A DNA stretch of 63,484 bases, the filler included, from Octopus bimaculoides (Eukaryota), in assembly GCF_001194135.2 (NCBI RefSeq). It is 5 parts of 5 records of this genome, joined end to end, with 100 filler letters (N's around TTAATTAATTAA, not from the genome) between each part and the next. Parts side by side here need not be neighbours in the genome. Positions count along the whole stretch, not along the records: positions 20,609 to 43,310 come from NC_068989.1; 4 more parts are not named here. One strand, written 5' to 3'. Both the position numbers and the translations under genes were made by a program. The notes below the pieces were generated by a model. It was not told the origin of the DNA. It saw only the letters and a program-made list of their open reading frames with translations, and did not search any database. Of this stretch, positions 20,772 to 43,225 are shown one piece after another (positions within the stretch are counted from its first letter, which is position 1; each line of letters opens with the position of its first letter).

Positions 20772-22215
20772 GAGTTTGGACTCTCAAAATGTGCTATGAT
20801 GGTGATGAGATAAGGAAAGCTTGCCAGGACAGAAGGCATATGGCTGCCAAGTGGTGAAATGATGAAGGCAATTCAATCCCAATCCAGTTATAAATACCTG
20901 GAAATACTTGAGGCAGATGGATTCAAATATCGCAACATGAAGGAAAAGATGAAAAGGGAGTATGTGCAGCAAGTAAGAAAAATATTGGCTTCTAAGCCGA
21001 ATGCAAGAAATATAATTTCATCAATAAATTCGTGCACAGTCACAGTAGTTCAGTATGGCGCTGGAATCCTGAAGTGGACAGAGGAGGAGCTAAAGGAGGT
21101 GGACAGAAAGTCAAGAAAGCTCCTAATGATGCTCCTAATGAAGCCCATCATCCACATGCAGACATTGATTGCGTATACATGAAGAGAGCAAATGGCGGAA
21201 GGGGACTGATAAGTGTAGACGACTACATGTATATCAAACTCAAGAGCTTAATGAGATTCCTAGGCTAAAGTAAGGAAACCTTGCTAGTGACAGTTAAGAA
21301 CAAAGGAGTATTGAGAGCAGAAAAAAAGGGAAGAAGTACAAACAGGACATGAAGAAGAATTGCACAACAAGGGTCTACACATTCAATTCCATGGAGCCAC
21401 AACAGAAGTTGCTGGAGAAAATAGGTGGGATTGGCTGATGAAAGGAACCCTAAAAAAAGAGACAGAGAGCACTAATACTGGCAGCACATGACCAAGCTTT
21501 GGCCACAAACTGGAGGGTCAACCTTAGGAATGAGCAAGTGTCCCCACTGTGCTGCATCTGCAATAGAGTGGATGAAATCATTGCCCATATCAGGAATGAA
21601 TGCCCTAGACTTGCCTAAAACCAATACAAGTTGTGGTGACACAACCAGGTAGTGTAAGTGCTACATTGGAAACTGTGTGAAAAGTGGGGGATAGAGAGAG
21701 GCAAGATGTGGTATGAGCACAAACCACTGTGAGCAGTGGAGTTGAAGACTAGCAAAATCCTCTGAGATTTCCCACTCAAAACAGATTGGGTGCTAAAGCA
21801 TAATGGATCAGTCCTAGTGGTGGTGGACAAGGAGCACCACATAACTATATAGTTGATGTTTCAAGCCCCTTTGACCCATGTGTAGTCAAGAAGGAAAAGG
21901 AAATTATAGATAGATACAACCCTCTTAAGTACAAAATACCCCAGCTATGGTAAATGAAGAAGGTGAAGACAGGGCCAATTATTGTTTGGTCCTTGGGAAC
22001 AATATCAGAAGGCATCAAGAGGAATATAAAGGAAATTGGAATAGAGTGCCCAGTAGTACTACACAAAAGGTTTGCCTCCTTGGCATGGCCAAAATAATCA
22101 GGAAAGTATTAGATAGCTGAAAAGAACGAATAGTATGGTACCATAGGCTGCAGGTAGTAAGCCCGCTATGCATGCAAGACTCCAGGAGCTACAACAAAAC
22201 CTGTGGTAAAGAGAA
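20771..22215 (+). mobile_element. 5'-truncated R4/Dong-like non-LTR retrotransposon (RT C-terminus, CCHC, restriction-like endonuclease), decayed, within a (TAA)n array
   Basis: EFGLSKCA...SYKYLEILEAD...WTEEELKEVDRKSRKL, GGRGLISVDD, CCICNRVDEIIAHIRNEC (~21550-21603), degenerate RLE motif, ending IIRKVLDS* at 22120; (AAT)n on both sides (20683-20770 and ~22215-22241). Confidence 0.88.
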
Positions 22216-23421: not shown

Positions 23422-23924
23422 CACCCACATAATAATTAAAGAACAATAATAACATCTGTCTTGACTTACTTTCAATAGGAGGCGGGGCGCACTTCTCTGA
23501 ATCTTCATTATCAGCTATTTCCTGAAAATTGATTAAAGCAAAATGTTAAGGGTTTCTGTGGTGGCATCATTTTCTCTACACTACTTGAAACACACACACA
23601 CACACACACACGCACACATGCACACACACACACACATACATACATACACAATGAAAACCAGTACAAAATAAAGCTCATGATTTCTGGCCTATTGAAATGA
23701 CTATATTTATGTTACGTAGATGCCTTTCTATTAGTACCTTTGAGAGACTGAGACTGATAAGGCAAAAGAAAGAAGGTTATTATGATGTATGTATGTATGT
23801 ATGTACGTATGTATGTACACATATATTTACATTTACAGACAAATAGATAGATACTTAGAGTGAAAGAGAGAGAGGAGAGAGATAAATGGTACGTAGGTAC
23901 ATAAATATGTACATAGACAGATAT

Positions 23925-24126
23925 TACTCTTTTACTTGTTTCATTCATTTGACTGCTGCCATACTGGAGCACTACCTTTAGTCAAGCAAACCGACCCCGG
24001 GACTTATACTTTGTAAGCCTAGTACTTATTCTATCGGTCTCTTTTGCCGAACCGCTAAGTGACGGGGACATAAACACACCTGCATCAGTTGTTAAGCAAT
24101 GCTAGGGGACAAACACAGACACACAA

Positions 24127-24165
<39 letters not shown>

Positions 24166-24340
24166 CATATATACGACGGGCTTCTTTCAGTTTCTGTCTA
24201 TCAAATCTACTCACAAGGCTTTGGTTGGCCCGAGGCTATAGTAGAAGACACTTGCCCAAGGTGCCACACAGTGGGACTGAACCCAGAACCATGTGGTTGG
24301 TAAGCAAGAAGCTACTTACCACACAGCCACTCCTGCACCT
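23925..24340 (-). mobile_element. SINE family A, full length
   Basis: A/B-box head at the right, ACTCTTT tail at the left. Confidence 0.88.
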
Positions 24341-24805
24341 ATATATAAGAATGTAGATAGATAGACAAATGAATGGATAAAATGATAAATAAGTGGATAG
24401 ACAGATATATAAGCAGACAGACAGACTTATCTATAATAATAAATGCCAAAAGGAATTTCTGTGTGTCAGTTTGTCACACTTTGACCCCCCCCCCTCTCAC
24501 TATTCAATGACACATTAAAATCAATGACCCATTAAAATCAATGACACTTCTACTCACTCTTCTTGTTGGGGTGAGAGTAATAGTAGGCATAGAGACGGTG
24601 AAGGCAGTAGTAGATTGACAATTGAGATGGTAATAGGGTGATAATAATAGTATGAGCTGGTGGTGGTGGTGGTGGTGGTGGTGGTGGTAGCTGAGGTGGT
24701 CAAGCATGATGGTGATAATAAGGAATATGAAAGTCAAAGGTGTTGATGGTGGGCATCAGTAGTCTGAATGGTGTGTGTATGGTAGTTGTGGTAGCGATGG
24801 TGGTA

Positions 24806-24896
24806 GCACTGGGGATGGTGATGGTTGAAAACAAACAACAGAAAGGGGATTTATTTCCCTGCTATTGATATAAACTAGTGCATTTTGCACCAAAAG
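24806..24896 (+). repeat. Orphan fragment of the ~350-bp HHR repeat
   Basis: GGGGATTTATTTCCCTGCTATTGATATAAACTAGTGCATTTTGCACCAAAAG matches the monomers at 26.5-27.3 kb. Confidence 0.65.
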
Positions 24897-25028
24897 AGGT
24901 TAGACAGAAAAAAAAAAAAATTGTGCTGACCTCCCGAATGGGAAAACAAAAAAATGTCACTTGTCATGAAGCTTTGCAATATATCCTTATTTTGACGAAA
25001 ATTGCTCATTGCTTGAAAAATATTGGTC

Positions 25029-25167
25029 AGCTTGCTTACCAACCACATAGTTCTGGGTTCAGTCCCATTGCATGGCACCTTGGGCAAGTGTCTTTTACTA
25101 TAGCCTCGGGCCGATCAAAGCCTTGTGAGTGGATTTGGTAGACGGAAACTGAAAGAAGCCCATCGTA

Positions 25168-25216
<49 letters not shown>

Positions 25217-25424
25217 GTGTGTATATGTTTGTCCTCCCGACATCGCTTGACAACCGATGCTGGTGTGTTTACGTCCCCGTAACTTAGCGGTTCAGCAAAA
25301 GAGACCGATAGAATGAGTACTAGGCTTCCAAAGAAGAAGTCCTGGGGTTGATTTGCTCAACTAAAGGCGGAGCTCCAGCATGGCCGCAGTCAAAAGACTG
25401 AAACAAGTAAAAGAGTAAAAGAGT
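25029..25424 (+). mobile_element. SINE family A (A box missing)
   Basis: B box GGTTCAGTCCC, CORE-like block, internal (TA)n, tail GAGTAAAAGAGTA. Confidence 0.88.
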
Positions 25425-25597
25425 ATGTACTCAATGCATGATGTGTCACTATTGGGCTCAAGGCCCAATGAAGAGCCCTCGACTGGAGTTAGCTTAAAAG
25501 CCGCCCTATTGGGTGGCTTTTAAGCTAGTAGATAGTCAGGAAGATAGATATGCTTAGCTACATAGACAGACAGTCAAACTGACAAACCAAGTGTTAA

Positions 25598-25645
<48 letters not shown>

Positions 25646-25694
25646 CTAGATAGATAGATAGATAGAGAGGTAGATAGATAGATAGATAGAGAGG

Positions 25695-25751
<57 letters not shown>

Positions 25752-26404
25752 GAGTAGGTAGGAAGGCAGGCATGCCAGCAGATATGTTGATTGGTCAACA
25801 GAAGCATTGATATAAGCATATGCAAATAGATTATGAAGATATTATCAACATACTGAGTTCTTCTTATTATAATGGTATTAAAATTTGAGGAGGATCTTAT
25901 TTCCATTGCATACACTTTTCAGGAACAACACTGACTTTCCAGACAATGATGGTCTGGAACCGCTTGTAATTTGCATTGATTTGTGCATAGGAACTTCAAA
26001 TTCCTGTGGCTGCCAGACTAGTTTACTGGTACTTTACAGTATTAATAAATTTGTATCATTTATACTAATGTACAGGTACCTACATGTCATTTAATTTGTA
26101 GGTAAATTTAATATTTGTTTAATTTAGAGTATGCTGACCAAGATGACCATCTGTAATTTGGAAAGGCTTTGGAATCAAAAGTTCCAGAAAATCAATGATA
26201 TACTTTTATATGTTATAGAGTTCTGAACATACACAATGAGAGGTAATATCTATTCTCACTTAAATATGGATGTTCTGTTTGAACAAACTTAACTGCAGTT
26301 GATACCATGAGAGAAACTCTCATATAGGCTTTTGGTGCAAAATGCATGCTTATTTATATCGGTAGGAAGGGGAGATAAATCCCCGCCATCCCCAGCACTA
26401 AGAC

Positions 26405-26450
26405 TACCAGCTCACGTGATTTTGACCTTCCTTGGTCTCATCAATGATGG
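26405..26450 (-). ncRNA. Type I hammerhead ribozyme, degenerate (inverted copy)
   Basis: Minus: CCATCA TTGATGA GACC AAGGAA GGTC AAAA TCACGTGA GC TGGTAG; perfect stem II and palindromic helix III core. Confidence 0.65.
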
Positions 26451-26832
26451 ACACTCAACCATGGATGGAATGAAGGAAGGTTGAAATCTGATGGTCTGAA
26501 GGTGATCTGAAGGTGATCTGATGGTCTTGGCACTAGAGGTGGTGGGGATTTATCTCCCCACAAATGATTTAACCAAGAGTGCATTTTGCACCAAAAGCCT
26601 ATATAACAGTCTCTCTCATGGTGTCTACCACAGTATAGTCTGTTCCAACAGGACATCCATGTTTAAGTGGGAATAAATATTACCTCTTGGTATTAATACT
26701 GTCTCTGTTGCTAATATATATATTTTTAACAAGCTCACTGGCTAATCACGACACCAGTGACTGTTCTGGGACTGATTTTCTATATATTGCTGGCTGGGAA
26801 ATAAATCTTTGCTACCTCTGGCTGTCGAGTGT

Positions 26833-26879
26833 CCATTGTTGATGAGACTAAGGAAGGTTAAAATCATGTGATCTAGTGA
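26833..26879 (+). ncRNA. Type I hammerhead ribozyme, degenerate
   Basis: CCATTG TTGATGA GACT AAGGAA GGTT AAAA TCATGTGA TC TAGTGA; predicted AUC cleavage after 26873. Confidence 0.62.
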
Positions 26880-27179
26880 TCTTGATGCTGGAGTGGGGAT
26901 TTATCTCCCCACTAGTGATATGAATAGCTGTGCATTTTGAACCAAAACTCTTTGAGAGTTTCACTCATAGTGTCTACCACAGTAAAGTTCGTTCCAACAG
27001 AACATCCATGTTTAAGTGGGAATAAATATTACCACTCAATATTAATACTGCCTCTGTCGTTAATATATATTTTTTAATGAGCTCACTGGCTAATTGCAGC
27101 ACCAATGTCTGTATGACATTGATTTTCTATATATCACTAGCATTGAGATGAATCACTGCTATATCTAGCGGTCGAGCAG

Positions 27180-27226
27180 CCATCATTGATCAGAGCAAGG
27201 AAAGTCAAAAACACATGATCTGGTGG
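27180..27226 (+). ncRNA. Type I hammerhead ribozyme, strongly degenerate
   Basis: CCATCA TTGATCA GAGC AAGGAA AGTC AAAA ACACATGA TC TGGTGG; stem I fully paired. Confidence 0.5.
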
Positions 27227-27980
27227 ACTTGGAGCTGGAGTTGGTAGGGACTTATTTCCCTGCTACTAATATAAACAAGTGTGCATTTTGCACCAAAAGC
27301 AAACATGAGAGTTTCTCTCTTGATATCTACTGCTGTATAGTTTGTTCTAACAGAACATCTGTGTTCATGTGAGAATAAATATTACTTCTTGATATTAATA
27401 TTGCTTCTGTCAATAATACATATACTACTAAATTTTGGACATTAAACAGAAAGCCATACACCAACTCTATTTTAAGACATTATAGAACATTAGGAAAAAT
27501 TTAACAGAATAAACACAATTATTACTCTGCAGAAAACCTCACTACTGCAGCATATTGCTTTAGAAATGATTCCAATAGCCAAATAGAAAGAAACCAAAAG
27601 TCAATATACAATTAATACAATGAGAAAATATAGCTACATTTTTGACAATGTGTGAGGAAATCCCAAATCTGGAAACAGCCAATGGAAAGCAAGGACTGTA
27701 ATATAACATTCTGTTGTAGCTATCTTAAGTTTATTCTATTAATTCTATTGTATTAAACAGAAATCTATTGAACTGAATTAATTCCAAAGGTCAGCAATGC
27801 CCTTAAGGCAATGAAGATTTGCAATCACTAAATAACATTATACACAGTGGATAAATTTTATTCTTATTCCAAAGATATACAAAAGAATGGGGAAATGGGG
27901 AAGAAAAAAATTTTTAAATTGTAAACAAAGATGTCTCTAATTGCTCTTTCTTTTTCTCCATCTCTTTCACTGTCCTGTTC

Positions 27981-28029
<49 letters not shown>

Positions 28030-28221
28030 NNNNNNNNNNNNNNNNNNNNNNNNNNNNNNNNNNNNNNNNNNNNNNNNNNNNNNNNNNNNNNNNNNNNNNN
28101 NNNNNNNNNNNNNNNNNNNNNNNNNNNNNNNNNNNNNNNNNNNNNNNNNNNNNNNNNNNNNNNNNNNNNNNNNNNNNNNNNNNNNNNNNNNNNNNNATAT
28201 ATATATATATATACACGCACA

Positions 28222-28967
28222 CAGGGTGTGGATGGTATTTGAGGACACATGCATTTTCAGTCATTATTTTATTTGACTAATTTTTATTGAACTTCTATTT
28301 CAGAAAATAACAATGGCAGGCCCTATGCTTGCTAATGAAATGAAAAGGCATGCTGTGATTGTAGTTTTGAAGGCTAAGCATAGTAATTTAGAAATTTTCT
28401 GAAAGTTGTTAGCAATGAAGAACATGTGATGCCACCTCACCTTTTCCCACATGGCCTCAGGGTGAATGCTGCTGCATATATTGAGGTTCTTGATAAAGTT
28501 GTTAAGCCTTGGATCAACAATGTATCCAATAGAAGGCTTTATGCCTTTCAACAAGATTCTGCACCATCACACAAGGCTCAAATGACACAAGAATGGATGG
28601 CCAACAATTTGCATGACCACGTCACTTCCAACATTTGGCCTCCTAATTCTCCAGATCTCAATCTACTGGACTACTATGTATAAAGCATCTTTGAGAAAAA
28701 TGTCAATGAATACCCCCATAGTACCAAAGATTTTTTGAAAGCCGCCATAGTTTGAATCATGTCTGGTATGAACAAGGATCACACAATCTGAGCTTATAAA
28801 CTATTTTGTTCATGTGTAGAAGCAATTATTGATGCTTATGGTGATCTTATTGAATGAAATTATTAAATTGATAATTTAGCTTTATATTTATGTTATTTTT
28901 ATAAAAATAGTTTTTTTCTGTTATTATATAAGCGTTTTTTTAAAATCATAAATCTGTCATCAAATAC

Positions 28968-29010: not shown

Positions 29011-29599
29011 NNNNNNNNNNNNNNNNNNNNNNNNNNNNNNNNNNNNNNNNNNNNNNNNNNNNNNNNNNNNNNNNNNNNNNNNNNNNNNNNNNNNNNNNNN
29101 NNNNNNNNNNNNNNNNNNNNNNNNNNNNNNNNNNNNNNNNNNNNNNNNNNNNNNNNNNNNNNNNNNNNNNNNNNNNNNNNNNNNNNNNNNNNNNNNNNNN
29201 NNNNNNNNNNNNNNNNNNNNNNNNNNNNNNNNNNNNNNNNNNNNNNNNNNNNNNNNNNNNNNNNNNNNNNNNNNNNNNNNNNNNNNNNNNNNNNNNNNNN
29301 NNNNNNNNNNNNNNNNNNNNNNNNNNNNNNNNNNNNNNNNNNNNNNNNNNNNNNNNNNNNNNNNNNNNNNNCTTGAAAATTTGCCATGCAATGAAAGCCA
29401 GTTAGAAATCCTTTTTAATCCTCCTTATACACATCTATATTAAAATATGCTTTCAGTTTAGCATTCTACCTTATTATTATTTTTTATTTTCCTATTATTT
29501 CTCCATGTGCGGTTAACACAACCCCACCATTTACTGACTTATATATATATATAAACTTTTAAATCAGTTCAAACATGTTTGGGACATATTTGACCTGTG

Positions 29600-29774: not shown

Positions 29775-30914
29775 TATATTTGTGTGTGTGTGTGTATAGT
29801 ATGTAGATAGGGTTATAATCCAAGCTGTGTCTTCTTGAAGTAGATCTAGTTATTCAAATACAACAAAATTATATGTAGATGTTATATTTGTGTAAGGTAT
29901 GCATAAGAGTTGAAAAGTACTGGACAATGATTTTGCTGAGTAATTACATATCAAAAGAAGAAATTAAAAAAATATTCTTGTTTTAAACAATAGATGTCAC
30001 AACACCATTACTTATCTTAGATGCTCTTCGGTAGACTGATAAATACATTTCTAGTTATTTAGCAATCATCAGTACCAGATACTACACAGAGTTGACAACC
30101 CTGAAATAACTTAGAAAGCTACAAGTTCCTTCATAACAATCAGTAAAACCTATTTTCTGACTACATGTGATCAGCCACCAGACTTGAATTGTATATTATG
30201 CACACTAAGCAGTGTTATGAAATGAACAAATTTTAAAACCATTTATCAGTCTACCAGAGGGTGCCCTGAGATGACTTATAGTGTTTTGATATTTGTTGCC
30301 TAAAGCAAGAATTTTCTCCATGAAAAGCTAAAGTGAAAAATGACGTTTTTTTCAGGTGAAATACACACAAACATATTTGAACTGACTTGTATGTATGTGT
30401 GTGTGTCACTGTGACCAAATAGTGTGCATGTGTATAGTGTATGTATGTGGGTGAAAGTTATCTTTGTCTATGTGTACTGCCTGTATGTGTATGTGTGTGT
30501 GTATGTGTATATATAGTCTGTGTTCAGATAGTATGTGCTTGTGTGGAAGTATACATTGTCTGTGGTCAGGTATTATGTGCTTGTGTAGGTGTGGGAGAGT
30601 GCATGATGGTGTGTGGTATGTGTACTGAGTTACACAGTGTGCGGCTGCTCATATAGAGGTATGTGTGGTGATGCTATTGAAGATTGTGTGTACGCGTGGA
30701 TGATGGTGTGTTGTATGTGTGCTGAGAAGTGTGTGTGGAGTGGGACGGTGTTCTGGGTGTGTGTGTAATGGTGTGTGATGTGAATGGGGATCCGTGTGGG
30801 ACTGGGGTAAAATGAAGAGAGGAGGTGAATTGAGCCCATGTGGTGCAAAGGAATGAAGAGAGAAGATTAATTCCTGTTCATGGCAATATATGTGACACAT
30901 AAAAGGCACCCATT

Positions 30915-33269: not shown

Positions 33270-35032
33270 ATATACATATATACACATACATATANNNNNN
33301 NNNNNNNNNNNNNNNNNNNNNNNNNNNNNNNNNNNNNNNNNNNNNNNNNNNNNNNNNNNNNNNNNNNNNNNNNNNNNNNNNNNNNNNNNNNNNNNNNNNN
33401 NNNNNNNNNNNNNNNNNNNNNNNNNNNNNNNNNNNNNNNNNNNNNNNNNNNNNNNNNNNNNNNNNNNNNNNNNNNNNNNNNNNNNNNNNNNNNNNNNNNN
33501 NNNNNNNNNNNNNNNNNNNNNNNNNNNNNNNNNNNNNNNNNNNNNNNNNNNNNNNNNNNNNNNNNNNNNNNNNNNNNNNNNNNNNNNNNNNNNNNNNNNN
33601 NNNNNNNNNNNNNNNNNNNNNNNNNNNNNNNNNNNNNNNNNNNNNNNNNNNNNNNNNNNNNNNNNNNNNNNNNNNNNNNNNNNNNNNNNNNNNNNNNNNN
33701 NNNNNNNNNNNNNNNNNNNNNNNNNNNNNNNNNNNNNNNNNNNNNNNNNNNNNNNNNNNNNNNNNNNNNNNNNNNNNNNNNNNNNNNNNNNNNNNNNNNN
33801 NNNNNNNNNNNNNNNNNNNNNNNNNNNNNNNNNNNNNNNNNNNNNNNNNNNNNNNNNNNNNNNNNNNNNNNNNNNNNNNNNNGTGTGTATTTCTGTGTGC
33901 ACGTGTGTGTGTCTGCGCATATATTTCTATGTGTGTGCTTGTGTGTGTGTATTCGTGTGTGTGTGTGTGTGTGTGTGCGTGTGTGTGTGTGTGTGTGTGT
34001 GCGTGTGTGTGTGTGTGTCAAAGATAGAATTAAAATTTATTTCAAGAAAAAAGTCAGGTCATTGTTATAGTTGTTGAGAGAAATAGGGGGAGAGGGAGTG
34101 AGTGTGTGTATGTGCGCACATATGTGTATGTGTGTGTATGAAAGATAGGTAAACTGTTGTCATGATAGTAACTAATGAGACTTTCACTATATAACAGTCT
34201 ACAATTACAGAAGGTGCGTGCATGATTAACCAATATTTTTATGGGCAGCATAGCAATAAATTAAGACCTAGTTTTACACAAAGTTTAGTTCCCTTTGTAA
34301 TTGGTGCAAATAGGGTTGTGTGATTAAGAGGTTCATTTCACAACCAGCTGGTTTCATGTCTTGTGAGTAAATTTGGTTGGTAGAAACTATGTGGAAGTCT
34401 GCTGTTTATATATTTGTACGTGCGTGTGTGTTGTGTATATGGAGCATGATGCAGTTTTGTGACTTGTTAGATCTTGTCAAAACATCCATCCCTACCAGCA
34501 TGGAAAACAGAAATTAAATGATAATCATGATGATGGAGATGATGACGACAACGACGACGATGATGATGATGATGGTGATGTGTGTATGACTGTGCACGTG
34601 TGCATGTTTTTCTCTATATGTCTTTACACTGTTTGACAGTTGGTGTTGGTTTGTTCACATTCCAGCAACTCAGTGGTTCAGCAATGAAACTAATAGAGTA
34701 AAGACCAAATTTTGCTTTAGATATATGTATTGGTATGTATTGCAAGAAACAGTTAGGTTTCTTTCTCTAACATTTTACATAGTTCAACCTCCAAAGGGTC
34801 TCTGGACTAACATTAGCCAACAGGGTGTGTAGCTTGAAGATTAGGGAGTCTGTATATATCGAGCTGCTACTTCTCTGAAATGAGAGGTTGCAGCTCTAGC
34901 ATTATGGACGTGTAATTTAAATGCTACAGTAAAGAATTGCAATTCAGATTCTTTAAGCCAAGCCAGCTGGCAGAAGACCTAGAAGTAGACAGTGAATGAG
35001 ATGATTAGATAATATTTATACTCTCAGTAAAG

Positions 35033-36474: not shown

Positions 36475-36753
36475 TATGCATAACTTTCTACAGGTATACT
36501 GAGTATTTTCCCCAAAGTCTCTGTTTCGGTAGGTCAGTCCAGCCACCCTTGGTACACTCATAGCACTGGGTCAGGAGCTTTTCGCCCAATCACATAATGT
36601 CATTACCTACACTGATGAGTATACACATGATGTTGTCATTTCTTTCTTTATTGTTCAATGTGTGTTATCAAAAATGACTATCATCTAACAATGTGGGGCA
36701 ATCATCATTGTTGTCATATACATACATCATACATACATACATATATACATACA

Positions 36754-36784
<31 letters not shown>

Positions 36785-36804
36785 GCATGTGAAAACATAC
36801 ATTA

Positions 36805-38125
36805 ATGTGAAAACCCGGAAAATACTAACTAGCACACATTATTTCCATATAAGCAGTGACATAGACTGCCTCAACCTAAAATGCAAACAAAGTGGCAGAG
36901 GCTTAACATCAATCCAAAATGCCTTTGTGTGTCGTATCATAACCTTTCTGCAACATCTTTTAACCACTAATTGTTGAAGTGAATCCCTTGACCAAGTTTA
37001 CATACATGAGGCTGATAACATCATAAAACTTGAAAGGCAGCTTCTTGAGCAGCATTCCTTGTCAGATAACCTTAAATACATGCCCAAAGAAGTTGCACGA
37101 CTCTACCCCAACGTATCATCAGATGAAACAAATGAGCATATATGAGCAGAAGCCCATGCATGGATATGTTAGTAGAAAGCTCAGAGATGACAGTAACATT
37201 GATCACTAACTGCATACCCACTTTGGAGGGTATGCATTTGCAATAAAGGAACAGGAAATATCAACCGAATACTTGATGCACAAAAGGGACAGGGATGCAA
37301 CAAAAGCAATAAAATGTGACAACTAGTTCAGACTTTGTGGAGTTAACACCAAAGATATTACCCATGTCATAAGCAGTTGTCTGAAGATGTCATCACTGGA
37401 TTATCTACTGATGAGACATGATGTTGTAGCTAGGACACTGTGTAACAAGATCTGTCAAAAGGATAACCCCCAAGGACAAAGAAATAAGAACTCACAGTAT
37501 GATGGAAGCTATAGCCACTCATAATAAAAAGGAGTACTGGTGGAGTGTTCCAGTGAAATCCTCAATAAAATGTAAACACAATAGACCTGATATAATGATT
37601 TGGGACAGAGAAGAGAAACTGTGTAGTTGTAGAAATCAGCTTCCCAGCAGATGTTAACATAAAGCTAAAGATCAGTGAAAAAGAGAGTACCTACACTGAA
37701 CTATTGAGAAATCTGCAGTTACTCTATCCAGATTACAAGTTCAGGTTTATACCTATAATTATTGGAGCACTGGGATATGTAACACACTGCCTAAATGCTA
37801 ATCTTGAGAAATATGGCTTCTCAAAAGCAGAAAGGAGCAAGCTGGTTCGAGGACTACAGATCCAATCCATCACTAGAACTGTAAAAATCTGTGAAACTTT
37901 TCAGAAGTTTATCATTTAAGTATATATGAGCATGTCAAGATATGCAACTATATGCATGAGAATACACACACTAAACAAAACATACAAATCTGCACATATA
38001 CATACATACATACAAAAATACCTTGATGTTGATGTTGAAATTTCAGTGAAGGAGCCTTGGATCTAGGTTAGAAACCAGCTCTTTCTGTATTGGCAAGAAA
38101 CCTTGAAATAAAACTGAATAATGAC
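36805..38125 (+). mobile_element. Second R4-like RLE non-LTR retrotransposon remnant, associated with (CATA)n
   Basis: KTRKILTSTHYFHISSDIDCLNLKCKQSGRGL, RLCGVNTKDITHVISSC, HNRPDIMIWD...EISFPAD, PIIIGALG, ends at TAA 37919; 3' UTR ends ATAAAACTGAATAATGAC followed by (ATAC)n; (CATA)n also upstream (36718-36785). Confidence 0.85.
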
Positions 38126-40081: not shown

Positions 40082-40925
40082 CAAGGTGGTATCAAAGAGT
40101 TCCTGGACTAGTTATGTTCAATAAAAGGTAAATTATTTTATTCTTTTATTCTTTTACCTGTTTCAGTCATTTTACTGTGGCCATGCTTGAGCACCGCCTT
40201 TCGTCGAGAAAATTGACCACAGGATTTATTCCTTTTAAGCCTAGTGCTTATTCTATCAGTTTTTTATTCCGAACTGCTAAGTTATGGGGACGTAAACACA
40301 CCAGCATTGGTTGTCAAGTGATGTTGTGGGGGACAAACACATACACACACAGACATGTTTTAACATCATCTCCTTGGAAATAGTCATCTTGCACAGTGTT
40401 CCTTCTACTTTTGGAATTTGGCCTGAAAGTCATTTTCCATGAGTTAAGGACCTTCTGCAATTTGCTCTTGATCTCGACAATGGTGTTAAAATGGTGACGT
40501 TTGGGCTGCATTTTCATCTTGGGGAAGAAATAGAAGTCTACAGGTGCTAAATTTGGTGAACAGAACGGGTGCAGAAGCAATATCATGTTGTTTTTTATGA
40601 GAAACTCATGAGTAAGGAGAGCTTGGTGACAGGGTGCATTGTCATCATAAAGAATCCAATTCTTTGCATTCCACACAAATCTGATTGCTTTCATCGAAAG
40701 TTCTCTCTCAAACGCTTTAAAATATCACTGTAGAACTCTCGATTGATGGTCTGGCCCTGGGGAACAAATTCTCAATTCACAATACTGTGGATGTCAGCAA
40801 AAATGATGAGCAGCCTCTTAACTGAGCTGTGACTCTGTCATGCCTTTTGAAGCGTCTGTGCCACTCAAGGCATTGTATATGACCCATTGAACCATCGCTG
40901 TAAACTTGCCAAAGCATGCTCTCAT
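40082..40925 (-). mobile_element. Internally deleted mariner (DD34D) with right TIR, interrupted by a SINE fragment
   Basis: TA|CAAGGTGGTATCAAAGAGTTCCTGGACTAG TIR; minus translations QCLEWHRRFK, EFVPQGQTINREFY, WILYDDNAPCH...HPFCSPNLAPVDFYFFPKMK, QDDYFQGD. Confidence 0.88.
40135..40352 (-). mobile_element. SINE family A 3' half nested in mariner
   Basis: TCTTT tail and body match. Confidence 0.78.
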
Positions 40926-40949: not shown

Positions 40950-41580
40950 TACATAAAAATAACTTGAAATACTAAAGAGTAAATTTATTCAATAAAATCA
41001 CCATTGGCTTCAACCATGTCCTCCAGATGACTTCAAACTTTCCTGCAACTCTGATGGATGGTTTCCTTGTTTAAGTTGGTGAATGCTGCCATAATCCTTG
41101 CCTTCAGTTCATCTTTGGTGTTACAAGGAGTTTTGTTAGTCTCTCACTGAACTGTACCCCACACATAATAATCAAGGGTGTTGCAGTGTGGGGAGCTAGG
41201 TGGCCAGATGTTAGGGGTGATGTGGTCACAGAAATTGTCTGACAGCCATGACTGGGTTCTCCTCCTTGTGTGGAATGGAGCAGAATCCTGTTACCAGACA
41301 GAGGGCCTTCCAGCAGCCACCCTCTTGACTAAGGGCAGCACTACCTTCTCCAGGCACTTGATGTAGGCTTCTCTGTTGAGTAGAAGGCCGTGCAGGAAGA
41401 TGAATGGAGGCACAACGTCACCATCACTAAAGATCATTACTCCGAACACCATGATGTTGACTGGATATTTGATTTTGATCTCTCTTGGTACATGTTTTGG
41501 GGACACGGCAAACACTCAGATTGACACCCAAACACTCTGAAATGTTCATATTGGAGCTTCCATCACAACATCTTGATTCT
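40950..41580 (-). mobile_element. DD37D (maT-like) transposase remnant
   Basis: IMVFGVMIFSDGDVVPPFIF...AYIKCLEKVVLP...W*QDSAPFH...WPPSSPHCNTLDYYVWG. Confidence 0.82.
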
Positions 41581-42803
41581 CTCTAGCACGTTGCTTAGCA
41601 ATCCAAAAATATCTCATGCCGCTCATCTTCAATTTGAAGAATACACGAAAACTTCTTTCTTTCTGCTTCTGGGTTTAGATTTCATTCTAGCCATTTGAAT
41701 TTTAATCTCCTGCCTCTCTTTCTTCCAATCAGTCCAAACCTATCTCTGAGCTCTGATGGATTTATTCAAACCACCACGACCACCACCACCAACAACAACA
41801 CCATATGATCTTATGCCAACCACAGGACTGTGTTGTAGGCCTCCACAGGCTGGAATAAGGACATGTTCAGCTTTTTATTATATTATGAGTCTCTATTTCC
41901 TTCTCTTTTCCAACATAAGCATTGACATAACTTTTTAGAATCTAAACCTGGACAAGGACTCTTTTAGCTTCCATTGTCATTTGTTTCTGAGTCCTTCAAG
42001 CTCTTCTTCCAAAGTCATGTGAAGACCTATAACCTTTATGACCATTTACCAATCTTACTTCATGGTTAGAATAAAATCCAGCTCACATGTGTGTTTGCCT
42101 GATTAGTAAGTCATCAGGTGACTGGCTGATGTGTGTGTGTGTGTATGTGTGTGTGAGTGTGTATGAGTGGGGGTATGCTTATAAGCAGCCCCCTCCCACA
42201 TCATTCTTAGGAGAAGTGACGGGTCATGTTCAAGCATATATACACACACACATATATATACACACACGCACACACACATATACAAAGAGAGAGAGAGATA
42301 GTTAGATTTACACATATTCATATATATATATATACATACATGTCAGTGTGTGCAAAGTTCTGTTTTCTTGTTTATATGTTTAATATGGCTTTTGACCACA
42401 TTATAGTAAATTGATAATTGATTATCAATAGAGATATTTTAAATGTAATTACATGTATGCATATAATGTTGATTGACCTAAATTTATTGTCGGTTCCAGC
42501 TTATTTGGCTCAGCATCAAACATGAACTATATTATTCTACAGAGATTTTCATATTTGTGCAGAAATGAAAACATTGATAAATGGAATATAAAACAAAATT
42601 ATGGATTTTAGTCCATCATTGAAAATATGAATTAATTATTTATTTAACAATTTCTTAAAGGTTACTCCAAAATAGCAATCCATTAATTGTTAGTCTTCAC
42701 CACAACAAGTGTAACCTACTCATACCCAATATGTTGTGTGTGTATGTGAGTGTGGGTGTGTGTATGCGTGTGTTTGTGTCTGTGTGTGTGTGTGTATGTA
42801 TAT

Positions 42804-43225
42804 AGGCATAGGAGTGACTGTGGTAAGTAGCTTGCTTACAAACCACATGAGTCCAGGTTAAGTCACACTGTGTGGCACCTTGGGCAAGTGTCTTCTACTA
42901 TAGCCTCGGGCCAACCAAAGCTTTGTGACTGGATTTAGTAGATGGAAACTGAAAGAAGCCTGTCATATATATTTATATATATATATATATGTGAGTGTGT
43001 AAGTGTGTGTGTGTTTGTGCATGTCTGCGTTTGTACCGCCAACATCGCTTGGCAACTGATGCTGATGTGTTTACGTCCCTGTAACTTAGCAGTTCGGCAA
43101 AAATGTCCAATAGAATAGCTACTAGGCTTACAAAGAATAAGTCCTGGGGTTGAGTTGCTCAACTAAAGGTGGTGCTCCATCATGGCCACAGTCAAATGAC
43201 TGAAACAAATGAAAGAATAAAAGAA
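42804..43225 (+). mobile_element. SINE family A, full length
   Basis: AGGCATAGGAGTGACTGTGG head through (GAATAAAA) tail. Confidence 0.85.

What the first reader, a model, noticed from the sequence alone, without database searches (positions are those of the whole stretch)
26185..27420. Retrozyme-like ~350-bp tandem repeat with one Type I hammerhead ribozyme per monomer
Seen: 355-bp and 347-bp monomers plus a partial third. Their junctions align to CCATCA-(T)TGATGA-GACC-AAGGAA-GGTC-GAAA-TCACGTGA-TC-TGATGG. Stem I is CCAUCA/UGAUGG, extended past a UCUUG bulge by AGUGU/GCACU; stem II is GACC/GGUC; helix III is the palindrome AUCACGUGAU; the cleavage triplet is AUC. Many substitutions keep pairing through G-U wobbles, and intact GAAA survives at 26483-26486. 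Established: metazoan non-LTR retrozymes (newt/axolotl satellite 2, schistosome Sm-alpha, coral, Mytilus) are tandem repeats of a few hundred bp with Type I HHRs that can dimerise through palindromic helix III and yield circular RNAs. Inference: this is a cephalopod retrozyme family. I know of no description of it but cannot check. Local copies have C3-to-U and mostly G12-to-A changes, so they are probably dead.
Basis: partly seen in the sequence, partly recalled or inferred. Interest (0 to 1): 0.9.

Follow-up and report, generated by a model that had tools for sequence, protein, structure and literature searches.

The report
Decayed hammerhead-bearing tandem repeat in octopus
This is most likely a dead, mutated copy of a known kind of small mobile repeat (a "retrozyme") that carries one self-cutting hammerhead RNA motif per ~350-bp unit, found in an octopus-like genome; the type is ordinary, but it may belong to a family not yet described in cephalopods.

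Summary
The repeat is real. Units of 355 and 347 bp and a 204-bp partial third run from 26519 to 27424, measured between predicted cleavage sites. Each unit junction carries a type-I hammerhead-like segment with the canonical metazoan layout: helix I 6 bp, helix II 4 bp with G10.1-C11.1, short palindromic helix III, AUC cleavage triplet. No extant copy has an intact core. Rfam hammerhead models find nothing, even at E<=10 on 74-81 nt. A generic hammerhead model gives only 11.6 and 10.8 bits (E about 0.2-0.3). The copies show no covariation and no extra conservation of the motif, which fits neutral decay in a CpG-depleted genome (o/e 0.24). A CpG-aware reconstruction restores G12 (GAAA) but leaves U at C3 in the founder, so 10 of 11 core bases. 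Shuffles give 0.0025 matches that good per piece. Tandem copies plus an inverted 5'-truncated copy are the published signature of Penelope-like-element insertion. Flanking repeats match Octopus vulgaris at about 80-85%. I found no relatives outside the window, so the family consensus stays untested. Verdict: a probable dead non-LTR retrozyme relic, a new member of a known kind, of modest interest.

The parts
26237..26460 (-). Copy A: an inverted partial monomer comprising a hammerhead-like segment plus about 175 nt of body. It is 5'-truncated at the inversion junction, and its outer end is at 26237.
   Evidence: Inverted repeats I1-I7. blastn gives 78-81% identity to the direct copies. Homology ends at 26237-26239.
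26404..26450 (-). Hammerhead-like core of copy A: CCAUCA UUGAUGA GACC AAGGAA GGUC AAA AUCACGUGAG C UGGUAG. It has three core deviations (U3, A12, G16.1). The predicted cleavage site lies between 26410 and 26409.
   Evidence: Generic type-I hammerhead model R1: 10.8 bits, E=0.33, full-length match. Sequence read.
26459..26464 (.). Head-to-head junction between the inverted and direct arms, centred on the palindrome CCATGG.
   Evidence: Inverted repeat I7: arms 26418-26451 and 26455-26488, 3 nt apart. Sequence read.
26460..26518 (+). Copy B junction hammerhead. It is 5'-truncated and damaged (GGAUGGAAUG AAGGAA GGUU GAAA UC ...), and is the only copy that keeps G12. It contains an 11-bp microduplication, TCTGAAGGTGA x2.8, at 26495-26525.
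26519..26873 (+). Direct unit 1, 355 bp, measured from predicted cleavage site to predicted cleavage site.
26833..26879 (+). Hammerhead-like core of copy C: CCAUUG UUGAUGA GACU AAGGAA GGUU AAA AUCAUGUGAU C UAGUGA. It has two core deviations (U3, A12). The predicted cleavage site follows C at 26873.
   Evidence: The only site in the piece that passes the strict descriptor. R1: 11.6 bits, E=0.19.
26874..27220 (+). Direct unit 2, 347 bp.
27180..27226 (+). Hammerhead-like core of copy D: CCAUCA UUGAUCA GAGC AAGGAA AGUC AAA AACACAUGAU C UGGUGG. It carries U3, C8 and A12, and helices II and III are broken.
   Evidence: 13 of 18 target pairs.
27221..27424 (+). Direct unit 3, partial. It ends about 35 nt further along the monomer than the outer end of the inverted arm.
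24845..24896 (+). Solo fragment of the same family, matching the monomer segment GGGGATTTAT...GCACCAAAAG. It is about 90% identical to copy D and is followed by an A13 tract. Possible further homology upstream to about 24797 is unresolved.
   Evidence: blastn, pairwise alignment, sequence read.

Best explanation
The locus is one old, neutrally decaying insertion of a non-autonomous retroelement of the metazoan non-LTR retrozyme type: a ~350-nt unit carrying one type-I hammerhead ribozyme.

Inferred life cycle of the family, taken from published relatives. Multimeric transcripts of tandem units fold so that two neighbouring hammerheads pair through the palindromic helix III (AUCACGUGAU). [quoted passage not shown] A host tRNA-type ligase circularises these. 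A Penelope-like-element (PLE) reverse transcriptase/GIY-YIG endonuclease then copies the circular or multimeric RNA by target-primed reverse transcription, which yields tandem cDNA copies.

Shown here:
- the tandem units;
- the per-unit hammerhead-like segment with canonical metazoan helix lengths;
- the inverted 5'-truncated copy abutting the partial tandem, which is the PLE-type insertion signature;
- both outer (3') ends falling in the same AT-rich part of the unit rather than at the cleavage site, so priming was internal;
- star-like 75-84% pairwise identity among the four copies, consistent with one event;
- neutral decay since insertion.

Inferred:
- The founder had G12, since the CpG decay pattern CA/TG/TA/CA favours an ancestral CG by roughly 15:1 on my rough rates.
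- The founder had U rather than C at core position 3, so the RNA that was inserted was probably already catalytically impaired.
- All present copies are inactive.
For: - Tandem structure.
- Inverted arm and head-to-head junction.
- Hammerhead architecture in register at every junction: 85% of pair cells are paired, against 22-48% when partners are slid.
- A strict descriptor hit exists only inside the repeat. Chance expectation is 0.031 per piece at <=2 core mismatches and 0.0025 at <=1, and the reconstructed founder has one mismatch.
- With a generic hammerhead covariance model, copies C and A rank 2nd and 3rd in the 22.7-kb piece, both as full-length matches.
- CpG o/e is 0.24 with TG/CA at 1.4, and many repeat columns show CG/TG/CA mixtures. 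This justifies restoring GGTCGAAA, CACGTG and the stem CpGs.
- Monomer GC is 37-40%. Monomer RNA folds better than shuffles (z=-3.07).
- The helix III self-duplex is -14.3 kcal/mol.
- Literature: canonical metazoan type-I hammerheads have helix I of 6 bp, helix II of 4 bp and a short palindromic helix III, and act as dimers in tandem repeats (PMC4209133). Retrozymes are ~150-450-bp low-GC tandem repeats, including 350-390 bp in the mussel (PMC7229834). PLE insertions are partial tandems with an adjacent inverted 5'-truncated copy (PMC8557442). Animal retrozymes derive from the pseudo-LTRs (pLTRs) of PLEs (bioRxiv 10.64898/2026.07.22.740005).
- Octopus-like host.
Against: - No Rfam hammerhead family matches any copy, even at E<=10 on 74-81 nt.
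- The generic model scores are individually non-significant (E about 0.2-0.3), and an unrelated chance site scores higher (13.6 bits).
- No extant copy has an intact core. The founder still has U3 opposite G8; the natural core variant documented is the covarying U3-A8, not U3-G8 (PMC4209133, PMC3088659).
- There is no covariation beyond chance and no extra conservation of the motif.
- The hammerhead fold is not the thermodynamic optimum of the reconstructed founder (-15.0 against -25.0 kcal/mol).
- CCAUCA is also complementary to the adjacent UGAUGA, so helix I is partly ambiguous.
- No other family members could be retrieved.
- No PLE coding relic was noticed next to the array: none by eye in a six-frame translation of 24300-26236 and 27425-28029, none in the seven more distant ORFs scanned against Pfam, and no relatives for ORFs within the array. 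The flank translations themselves were not scanned against a domain library.
Confidence: 0.7

Rival explanations
1. It is an ordinary local tandem or inverted duplication (a minisatellite-like repeat or a fragment of some other transposable element) whose resemblance to a hammerhead is coincidental and has been enhanced by composite or CpG-guided reconstruction.
For: Rfam hammerhead models find nothing. Generic model E-values are 0.19-0.33, and a clear chance site scores higher. There is no covariation. The hammerhead fold is not the minimum-free-energy structure. The ideal consensus exists only as a composite of copies. No further family members were found.
Against: A site with <=2 core mismatches and all three helices is expected only 0.031 times per piece, about 5e-4 per monomer, yet one lies exactly at the unit junction. 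The helix lengths of 6 bp, 4 bp and a palindromic helix III, the G10.1-C11.1 pair and the AUC triplet all match the specific metazoan type (PMC4209133). Unit size, GC content and the PLE-like inverted-plus-tandem layout fit independently. The G12 restoration follows from the same CpG decay seen at many other columns.
Confidence: 0.15
2. The units are pseudo-LTR (pLTR) or terminal fragments of an autonomous Penelope-like element whose coding part was lost to 5' truncation, rather than a separate non-coding retrozyme family. The mechanism is the same, but the parent is different.
For: The inverted 5'-truncated copy plus partial tandem is the classical PLE insertion structure, and hammerheads sit in PLE pLTRs (PMC8557442, PMC4209133). 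Retrozymes and pLTRs are reported to be homologous (bioRxiv 10.64898/2026.07.22.740005).
Against: There are 2.6 complete head-to-tail units with no intervening or adjacent reverse transcriptase or GIY-YIG relic. ORFs within the repeat have no relatives, and no such relic was noticed in the array flanks or in the scanned ORFs of the piece. The hammerhead is of the canonical type (4-bp helix II, 6-bp helix I) that PMC7229834 assigns to retrozymes, whereas metazoan PLEs typically carry minimal variants with a long helix II (PMC4209133).
Confidence: 0.1
3. It is a C/D-box snoRNA-like or SINE-like (Sm-alpha-type, pol III) retrogene array. Here UGAUGA would be a C box and CUGA a D box closed by a terminal stem.
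For: A weak snoU83B alignment over the UGAUGA region (13.9 bits against a gathering score of 35, E=0.99). Copy B reads CUGAUGG.
Against: The D-box CUGA occurs only in copy B; the majority and founder state is CUGG. The C-D spacing of about 33 nt leaves no guide region. There are no tRNA-like or pol III features (ARAGORN found 0). This reading leaves GAAA, helix II and the helix III palindrome unexplained.
Confidence: 0.03

Closest known systems
Metazoan non-LTR retrozymes, especially the Mytilus galloprovincialis 350-390-bp repeats (Cervera & de la Pena 2020, PMC7229834)
   Same: Non-coding, low-GC tandem units of about 350 bp with one type-I hammerhead per unit. The host is a mollusc. The repeat is presumed to depend on PLE machinery.
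   Different: The copies here are decayed, with 2-4 core defects. The founder has U3. Only 2.6 direct copies plus 0.6 of an inverted copy are present. Nothing is known about expression, circular RNA or self-cleavage. I found no sequence similarity to any described family, and none could be tested.
Newt satellite 2 / axolotl HHR_Amex retrozymes (dimeric hammerheads)
   Same: A weak helix III with a palindromic centre predicts activity only as a double hammerhead between neighbouring units. The unit size is 330-350 bp.
   Different: The helix III palindrome here is longer: AUCACGUGAU, which forms a 10-bp intermolecular duplex of -14.3 kcal/mol. The host is an invertebrate. The loop 1-loop 2 tertiary contacts were not assessed.
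Penelope-like element pLTRs with hammerheads (Cervera & de la Pena 2014, PMC4209133; Craig et al. 2021, PMC8557442)
   Same: The insertion architecture is the same: a partial tandem with an adjacent inverted 5'-truncated copy, and hammerheads on opposite strands 100-700 bp apart.
   Different: There is no reverse transcriptase/GIY-YIG ORF. The hammerhead is canonical-type (4-bp helix II) rather than the minimal type with a 7-8-bp helix II. Whether the '30-40-bp tail' applies is only hinted at by the 35-nt difference between the arm ends.
Schistosoma Sm-alpha hammerhead SINE-like repeats
   Same: A dispersed or tandem ~330-bp non-coding repeat with a type-I hammerhead in an invertebrate.
   Different: No pol III promoter or tRNA-like features were detected here.

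Membership tests
Hammerhead ribozyme, type I (Rfam RF00163 / canonical metazoan type-I hammerhead) | Conserved core C3 U4 G5 A6 N7 G8 A9 / G12 A13 A14 / A15.1-U16.1 / H17 | tested here: not met
   No extant copy has it. A carries U3, A12 and G16.1. C carries U3 and A12. D carries U3, C8, A12 and A15.2, with broken helix pairs. B lacks the 5' half. The CpG-aware founder has 10 of 11 core bases, with U3 and H17=C.
Hammerhead ribozyme, type I (Rfam RF00163 / canonical metazoan type-I hammerhead) | Three helices around the core with helix I open-ended. The metazoan canonical form has helix I of about 6 bp, helix II of about 4 bp closed by G10.1-C11.1, and a short helix III with a palindromic centre. 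| tested here: met
   Descriptor hit. 85% of pair cells are paired in register, against 22-48% when partners are slid. Full-length matches to the generic model. The architecture is as described in PMC4209133.
Hammerhead ribozyme, type I (Rfam RF00163 / canonical metazoan type-I hammerhead) | Score at or above the Rfam gathering threshold for a hammerhead family | tested here: not met
   There is no hammerhead hit at gathering, nor at E<=10 on 1.6 kb, 81 nt or 74 nt.
Hammerhead ribozyme, type I (Rfam RF00163 / canonical metazoan type-I hammerhead) | Covariation or conservation supporting the helices and core across copies | tested here: not met
   One double change, no better than shuffles. The motif is 73-80% identical between copies and the body 75-83%. 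Conservation shows no heterogeneity (p=0.17). This is what neutral decay of one insertion predicts, so it is uninformative about the family.
Hammerhead ribozyme, type I (Rfam RF00163 / canonical metazoan type-I hammerhead) | Site-specific self-cleavage after H17 | not testable with these tools
   This needs in vitro transcription of monomer and dimer constructs.
Metazoan non-LTR retrozyme | Head-to-tail tandem units of about 150-450 bp with low GC (<45-50%) | tested here: met
   Units of 355 and 347 bp plus a 204-bp partial. GC is 37-40%.
Metazoan non-LTR retrozyme | One type-I hammerhead per unit | tested here: inconclusive
   There is one hammerhead-like segment per unit junction, and all of them are mutated (see the rows above).
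Metazoan non-LTR retrozyme | Non-coding, with no LTR, primer-binding site or polypurine tract | tested here: met
   Only short ORFs are present, with no real homologues: none scored, and the three weak hits (E 4e-5 to 7e-4, long multi-stretch proteins) were judged spurious and not examined. There are no terminal direct repeats other than the units themselves.
Metazoan non-LTR retrozyme | A multi-copy family dispersed in the genome, co-existing with PLEs | tested here: inconclusive
   One extra solo fragment lies at 24845-24896. There is none in 20 kb of Octopus vulgaris chromosome (L049) or in six other loci. No whole-genome search was possible.
Metazoan non-LTR retrozyme | Expressed as unit-length linear and circular RNAs | not testable with these tools
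   No transcriptome data are accessible.
Penelope-like-element-type insertion | A partial tandem with an adjacent inverted 5'-truncated copy | tested here: met
   The inverted arm 26237-26460 abuts the direct arm 26460-27424. The arms are about 80% identical, so this is not an assembly foldback. The feature is as described in PMC8557442.
Penelope-like-element-type insertion | Reverse transcriptase plus GIY-YIG endonuclease ORF between pLTRs | tested here: not met
   There is no such ORF in the array: its ORFs are short and have no relatives. In the flanks, none was noticed by eye in a six-frame translation, which was not scanned against a domain library. The element is therefore non-autonomous or a fragment.
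C/D-box snoRNA | C box RUGAUGA and D box CUGA brought together by a terminal stem, with a guide region | tested here: not met
   CUGA occurs only in copy B, and the founder reads CUGG. The Rfam snoU83B match is 13.9 bits against a gathering score of 35.

The most novel reading that the evidence does not exclude
The relic marks a still undescribed cephalopod retrozyme family whose younger copies elsewhere in octopus genomes keep a working dimeric type-I hammerhead and produce abundant ~350-nt circular RNAs. In the boldest version, the U3-G8 core seen in the founder of this insertion is the family's natural, functional state: a wobble variant of the C3-G8 pair not documented in natural hammerheads.
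Probability: 0.2. Interest if true: 0.5.

Novelty: new member of a known kind. Interest (0 to 1): 0.3.

Why it matters
If the family is confirmed genome-wide, it would extend hammerhead retrozymes and their ribozyme-made circular RNAs to cephalopods. These animals are notable for unusual RNA biology and for genomes rich in transposable elements. It would also give a clean example linking a retrozyme array to the PLE-type "inverted plus tandem" insertion scar, which supports the recent proposal that animal retrozymes are mobilised by, and derived from, Penelope-like elements. The locus itself is a dead copy with no plausible present function.

Tried and rejected
1. Rfam scans at the gathering threshold and at E<=10 on 1.6 kb, 81 nt and 74 nt found no hammerhead family. 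The only matches were chance hits (blv_FSE on the GGGGAUUUAUCUCCCC hairpin, miRNA and snoRNA models).
2. I looked for relatives through spurious ORFs.
 - A chimeric 699-aa query made from all open frames of the units gave 8000 word candidates, none of which scored.
 - An exhaustive HMMER search with the antisense frame across the hammerhead (26311-26481) gave only three weak hits (E 4e-5 to 7e-4, long multi-stretch proteins), which I judged spurious without inspecting them.
3. DNA pattern scans.
 - A two-block pattern found nothing in metagenome or genome contigs.
 - The 18-nt conserved block gave 48 metagenome hits, all confined to the seed and therefore chance.
 - The reconstructed hammerhead pattern found nothing in genome or viral contigs.
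4. Exact-protein look-ups of two window ORFs were not on record. A mariner-like ORF found no homologues.
5. I fetched 20 kb of Octopus vulgaris chromosome and six other loci through a LINE-tail homologue. None contains the repeat, although L049 shares many other repeats with the piece, which confirms an octopus-like origin.
6. Thermodynamic folding does not favour the hammerhead fold in the founder or in a cofolded dimer. I treat this as uninformative for dimeric, co-transcriptionally acting hammerheads.
7. I considered the snoRNA and SINE readings and rejected them.
8. I found no convincing target-site duplication. The best candidate, GAACATACACAA at 26225 against GGACATTAAACAG at 27438, matches at only 9 of 13 positions.
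9. A literature search for the motif sequence itself returned only unrelated primers. The paper on C3-G8 exchanges (PMC1986816) is not held.
Full report
**What is in the sequence**

Tandem Repeats Finder reports one long-period array in the piece: 26514-27424, period 349, 2.6 copies, 76% matches. The repeat finder and blastn confirm three direct copies with spacings of 347-353 bp. When unit boundaries are placed at the predicted hammerhead cleavage sites (after C at 26518, 26873 and 27220), the units are 355 bp, 347 bp and a 204-bp partial third.

It is 78-81% identical to the direct copies. It meets them head-to-head at a CCATGG palindrome (26459-26464).

The first direct copy (B) is 5'-truncated inside its hammerhead-like segment and carries an 11-bp x2.8 microduplication at 26495-26525. 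A 52-bp solo fragment of the same sequence lies 1.3 kb upstream, at 24845-24896.

**The hammerhead-like segment**

The copies read as follows:
- A (minus strand): CCAUCA UUGAUGA GACC AAGGAA GGUC AAA AUCACGUGAG C UGGUAG
- C: CCAUUG UUGAUGA GACU AAGGAA GGUU AAA AUCAUGUGAU C UAGUGA
- D: CCAUCA UUGAUCA GAGC AAGGAA AGUC AAA AACACAUGAU C UGGUGG
- B: keeps only ...AAGGAA GGUU GAA AUC ... GAUC UGAUGG

The topology is type I: helix I is open, and helices II and III are closed. The dimensions are helix I 6 bp, helix II 4 bp beginning with G10.1-C11.1, a helix III that is a short stem within the palindrome AUCACGUGAU, and the cleavage triplet AUC. These are the dimensions given for canonical metazoan type-I hammerheads that act as dimers in tandem repeats (PMC4209133).

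No extant copy has an intact core: each has 2-4 deviations.

**Is it more than chance?**

- A strict descriptor (<=2 core mismatches, helix I >=5 of 6 pairs, helix II >=4 bp, helix III >=3 bp) finds one site in the 22.7-kb piece, copy C. In 1200 dinucleotide-preserving shuffles, such sites occur 0.031 times per piece, sites with <=1 mismatch 0.0025 times, and perfect sites never.
- I built a generic type-I hammerhead covariance model from 60 synthetic sequences that obey only the textbook consensus. It ranks C (11.6 bits, E=0.19) and A (10.8 bits, E=0.33) second and third in the piece, both as full-length matches. The top hit, 30036-30078 on the minus strand (13.6 bits), has no helix II or III and is chance. 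I chose the model's loop and stem lengths knowing the candidate, so these E-values are somewhat optimistic.
- Rfam's curated hammerhead models report nothing at the gathering threshold or at E<=10, even when only 74-81 nt are searched.

Taken alone, the extant copies are marginal. The case rests on the position of the motif at every unit junction, on its specific architecture, and on the reconstruction described next.

**Reconstruction and decay**

The piece is strongly CpG-depleted: CpG o/e is 0.24 and TG/CA are at 1.4. Fifteen or more repeat columns show CG/TG/CA mixtures.

At the G12 position the copies read CA, TG, TA and CA. On rough, hand-estimated rates (about 0.06 per-lineage transition probability and about 0.75 CpG loss), an ancestral CG, meaning GGUC-GAAA, is favoured over CA by roughly 15:1. 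The same logic restores CACGUG in helix III, CCAUCG in helix I, and AGCGU/GCGCU in the distal extension of helix I. It also shows that several apparently compensatory changes are simply CpG decay on both arms of a stem.

Position 3 is T in all three alignable copies and is not in a CpG, so the founder of this insertion had U3. The founder therefore has 10 of 11 core bases.

The documented natural variant at this pair is the covarying U3-A8 (PMC4209133, PMC3088659). From general knowledge of hammerhead mutagenesis (not checked here), a single C3-to-U change is strongly deleterious. The inserted RNA was therefore probably already impaired.

Among the copies:
- there is no covariation beyond chance;
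- the motif is no better conserved than the body, 73-80% against 75-83%;
- conservation is homogeneous along the unit (p=0.17);
- pairwise identities are star-like at 75-84%.

This points to one insertion event followed by neutral decay. Such data cannot test selection on the family.

**Structure prediction**

A decayed unit RNA folds more stably than its shuffles: z=-3.07 on the plus strand and -2.31 on the minus strand. The hammerhead fold of the founder is not its minimum-free-energy structure, at -15.0 against -25.0 kcal/mol. One reason is that CCAUCG can pair with the adjacent UGAUGA. The helix III palindrome can form a 10-bp intermolecular duplex of -14.3 kcal/mol. This agrees with the dimeric mode described for newt, axolotl and PLE hammerheads (PMC4209133, PMC7229834).

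**What kind of insertion**

A partial tandem with an adjacent inverted 5'-truncated copy is the published hallmark of Penelope-like-element insertions, whose pLTRs carry hammerheads (PMC8557442). Hammerhead pairs on opposite strands 100-700 bp apart are also noted in PMC4209133.

The outer (3') ends of both arms fall in the same AT-rich part of the unit, about 35 nt apart. They do not fall at the cleavage site. This implies internal priming on a circular or multimeric RNA, as proposed for retrozymes (PMC7229834).

The array itself encodes no reverse transcriptase or GIY-YIG endonuclease. Its ORFs are short and have no relatives. I noticed no such relic by eye in a six-frame translation of the flanks, though I did not scan those translations against a domain library. 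Seven more distant ORFs of the piece gave only a weak DDE_3 match in Pfam.

Unit length, GC of 37-40% and the canonical (not minimal) hammerhead match the non-LTR retrozyme definition (PMC7229834). [quoted passage not shown]

**Host**

A LINE-tail relic at about 37.6-37.9 kb has as its closest named relatives Octopus vulgaris and O. bimaculoides proteins, at 79-80% identity over the aligned half. Twenty kilobases of O. vulgaris chromosome OX597824.1 share 47 repeat matches with the piece, the strongest at about 80-85% identity. An octopod origin is therefore supported.

**Relatives and prior knowledge**

I could not retrieve any other member of the family from the protein, metagenome, prokaryote-genome or viral collections, nor from about 140 kb of fetched eukaryotic loci.

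In the searchable literature I found no description of cephalopod retrozymes. However, the giant squid genome paper lists 235 Hammerhead_1 Rfam hits (PMC6962438), and retrozymes are described in another mollusc, Mytilus (PMC7229834).

**Verdict**

The specific evidence offered for it, G-U-preserving substitutions, does not hold. The founder's U3 and the negative Rfam results are genuine weaknesses. This is a new member of a known kind, of modest interest.

Noticed in passing
window 24845-24896 (possibly from about 24797): A solo fragment of the same repeat (the GGGGATTTAT...GCACCAAAAG segment). It is about 90% identical to copy D, is followed by AGGTTAGACAG plus A13, and sits next to an inverted SINE. 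Upstream, TGGTGGTAGCACTGGGGATGG resembles the sequence just 3' of the predicted cleavage site. That region is TGG/TGGTAG-repetitive, so I could not decide whether the fragment starts at the cleavage site.
   Followed up: partly
window 30036-30078 (-): The best hit of the generic hammerhead model (13.6 bits, E=0.041): CUGGUA CUGAUGA ... GAAA ... UAUCAG. It has an intact CUGAUGA and GAAA but no helix II or III, and it is not in a repeat. I judge it a chance match.
   Followed up: yes
window 26495-26525: An 11-bp microduplication (TCTGAAGGTGA x2.8) inside the damaged junction hammerhead of copy B, right next to the inversion junction.
   Followed up: partly
window 26542-26568, 26893-26919 and equivalents; also GTGCATTTTGCAC and GAGAGTTTCTCTC in each unit: Each unit contains several short, perfect hairpin palindromes. 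The GUGGGGA-UUUAUC-UCCCCAC hairpin gives a weak chance match to the blv_FSE model (24.1 bits, E=0.061). TGCATTTTGCACCAAAAG is the best-conserved block, but not significantly so (p=0.17).
   Followed up: partly
window 23924-24342, 25029-25425, 40145-40351, 42802-43221 and others: Multiple copies of an interspersed repeat containing ...GGGACTGAACCC..GAACCATGTGGTT..., probably a SINE. They match the Octopus vulgaris locus L049 at 80-85% identity. ARAGORN calls no tRNA in them.
   Followed up: partly
window about 37611-37919 (+), 36693-36977 (+), 20859-21268 (+): Relics of the C-terminal region of a non-LTR (LINE) reverse-transcriptase protein. The 106-aa stretch at 37.6-37.9 kb has Octopus vulgaris and O. 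bimaculoides proteins as its closest named relatives. Pfam finds no domain in these fragments.
   Followed up: partly
window 28426-28683 (+), 40314-40694 (-), 41291-41515 (-): Relics of Tc1/mariner-type DDE transposases. Pfam gives DDE_3 at E=8e-5 for the first. The others look mariner-like by eye but have no Pfam hit and no homologue hit.
   Followed up: partly
window 28030-28196, 29011-29371, 33295-33882: Runs of N, which are assembly gaps, lie inside the piece. The source is a draft assembly, and microsatellites flank the gaps.
   Followed up: no
whole piece 20609-43310: Strong CpG depletion (o/e 0.24, with TG and CA at about 1.4) at 36% GC. This implies heavy methylation-driven decay and matters for any ancestral reconstruction in this genome.
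   Followed up: yes
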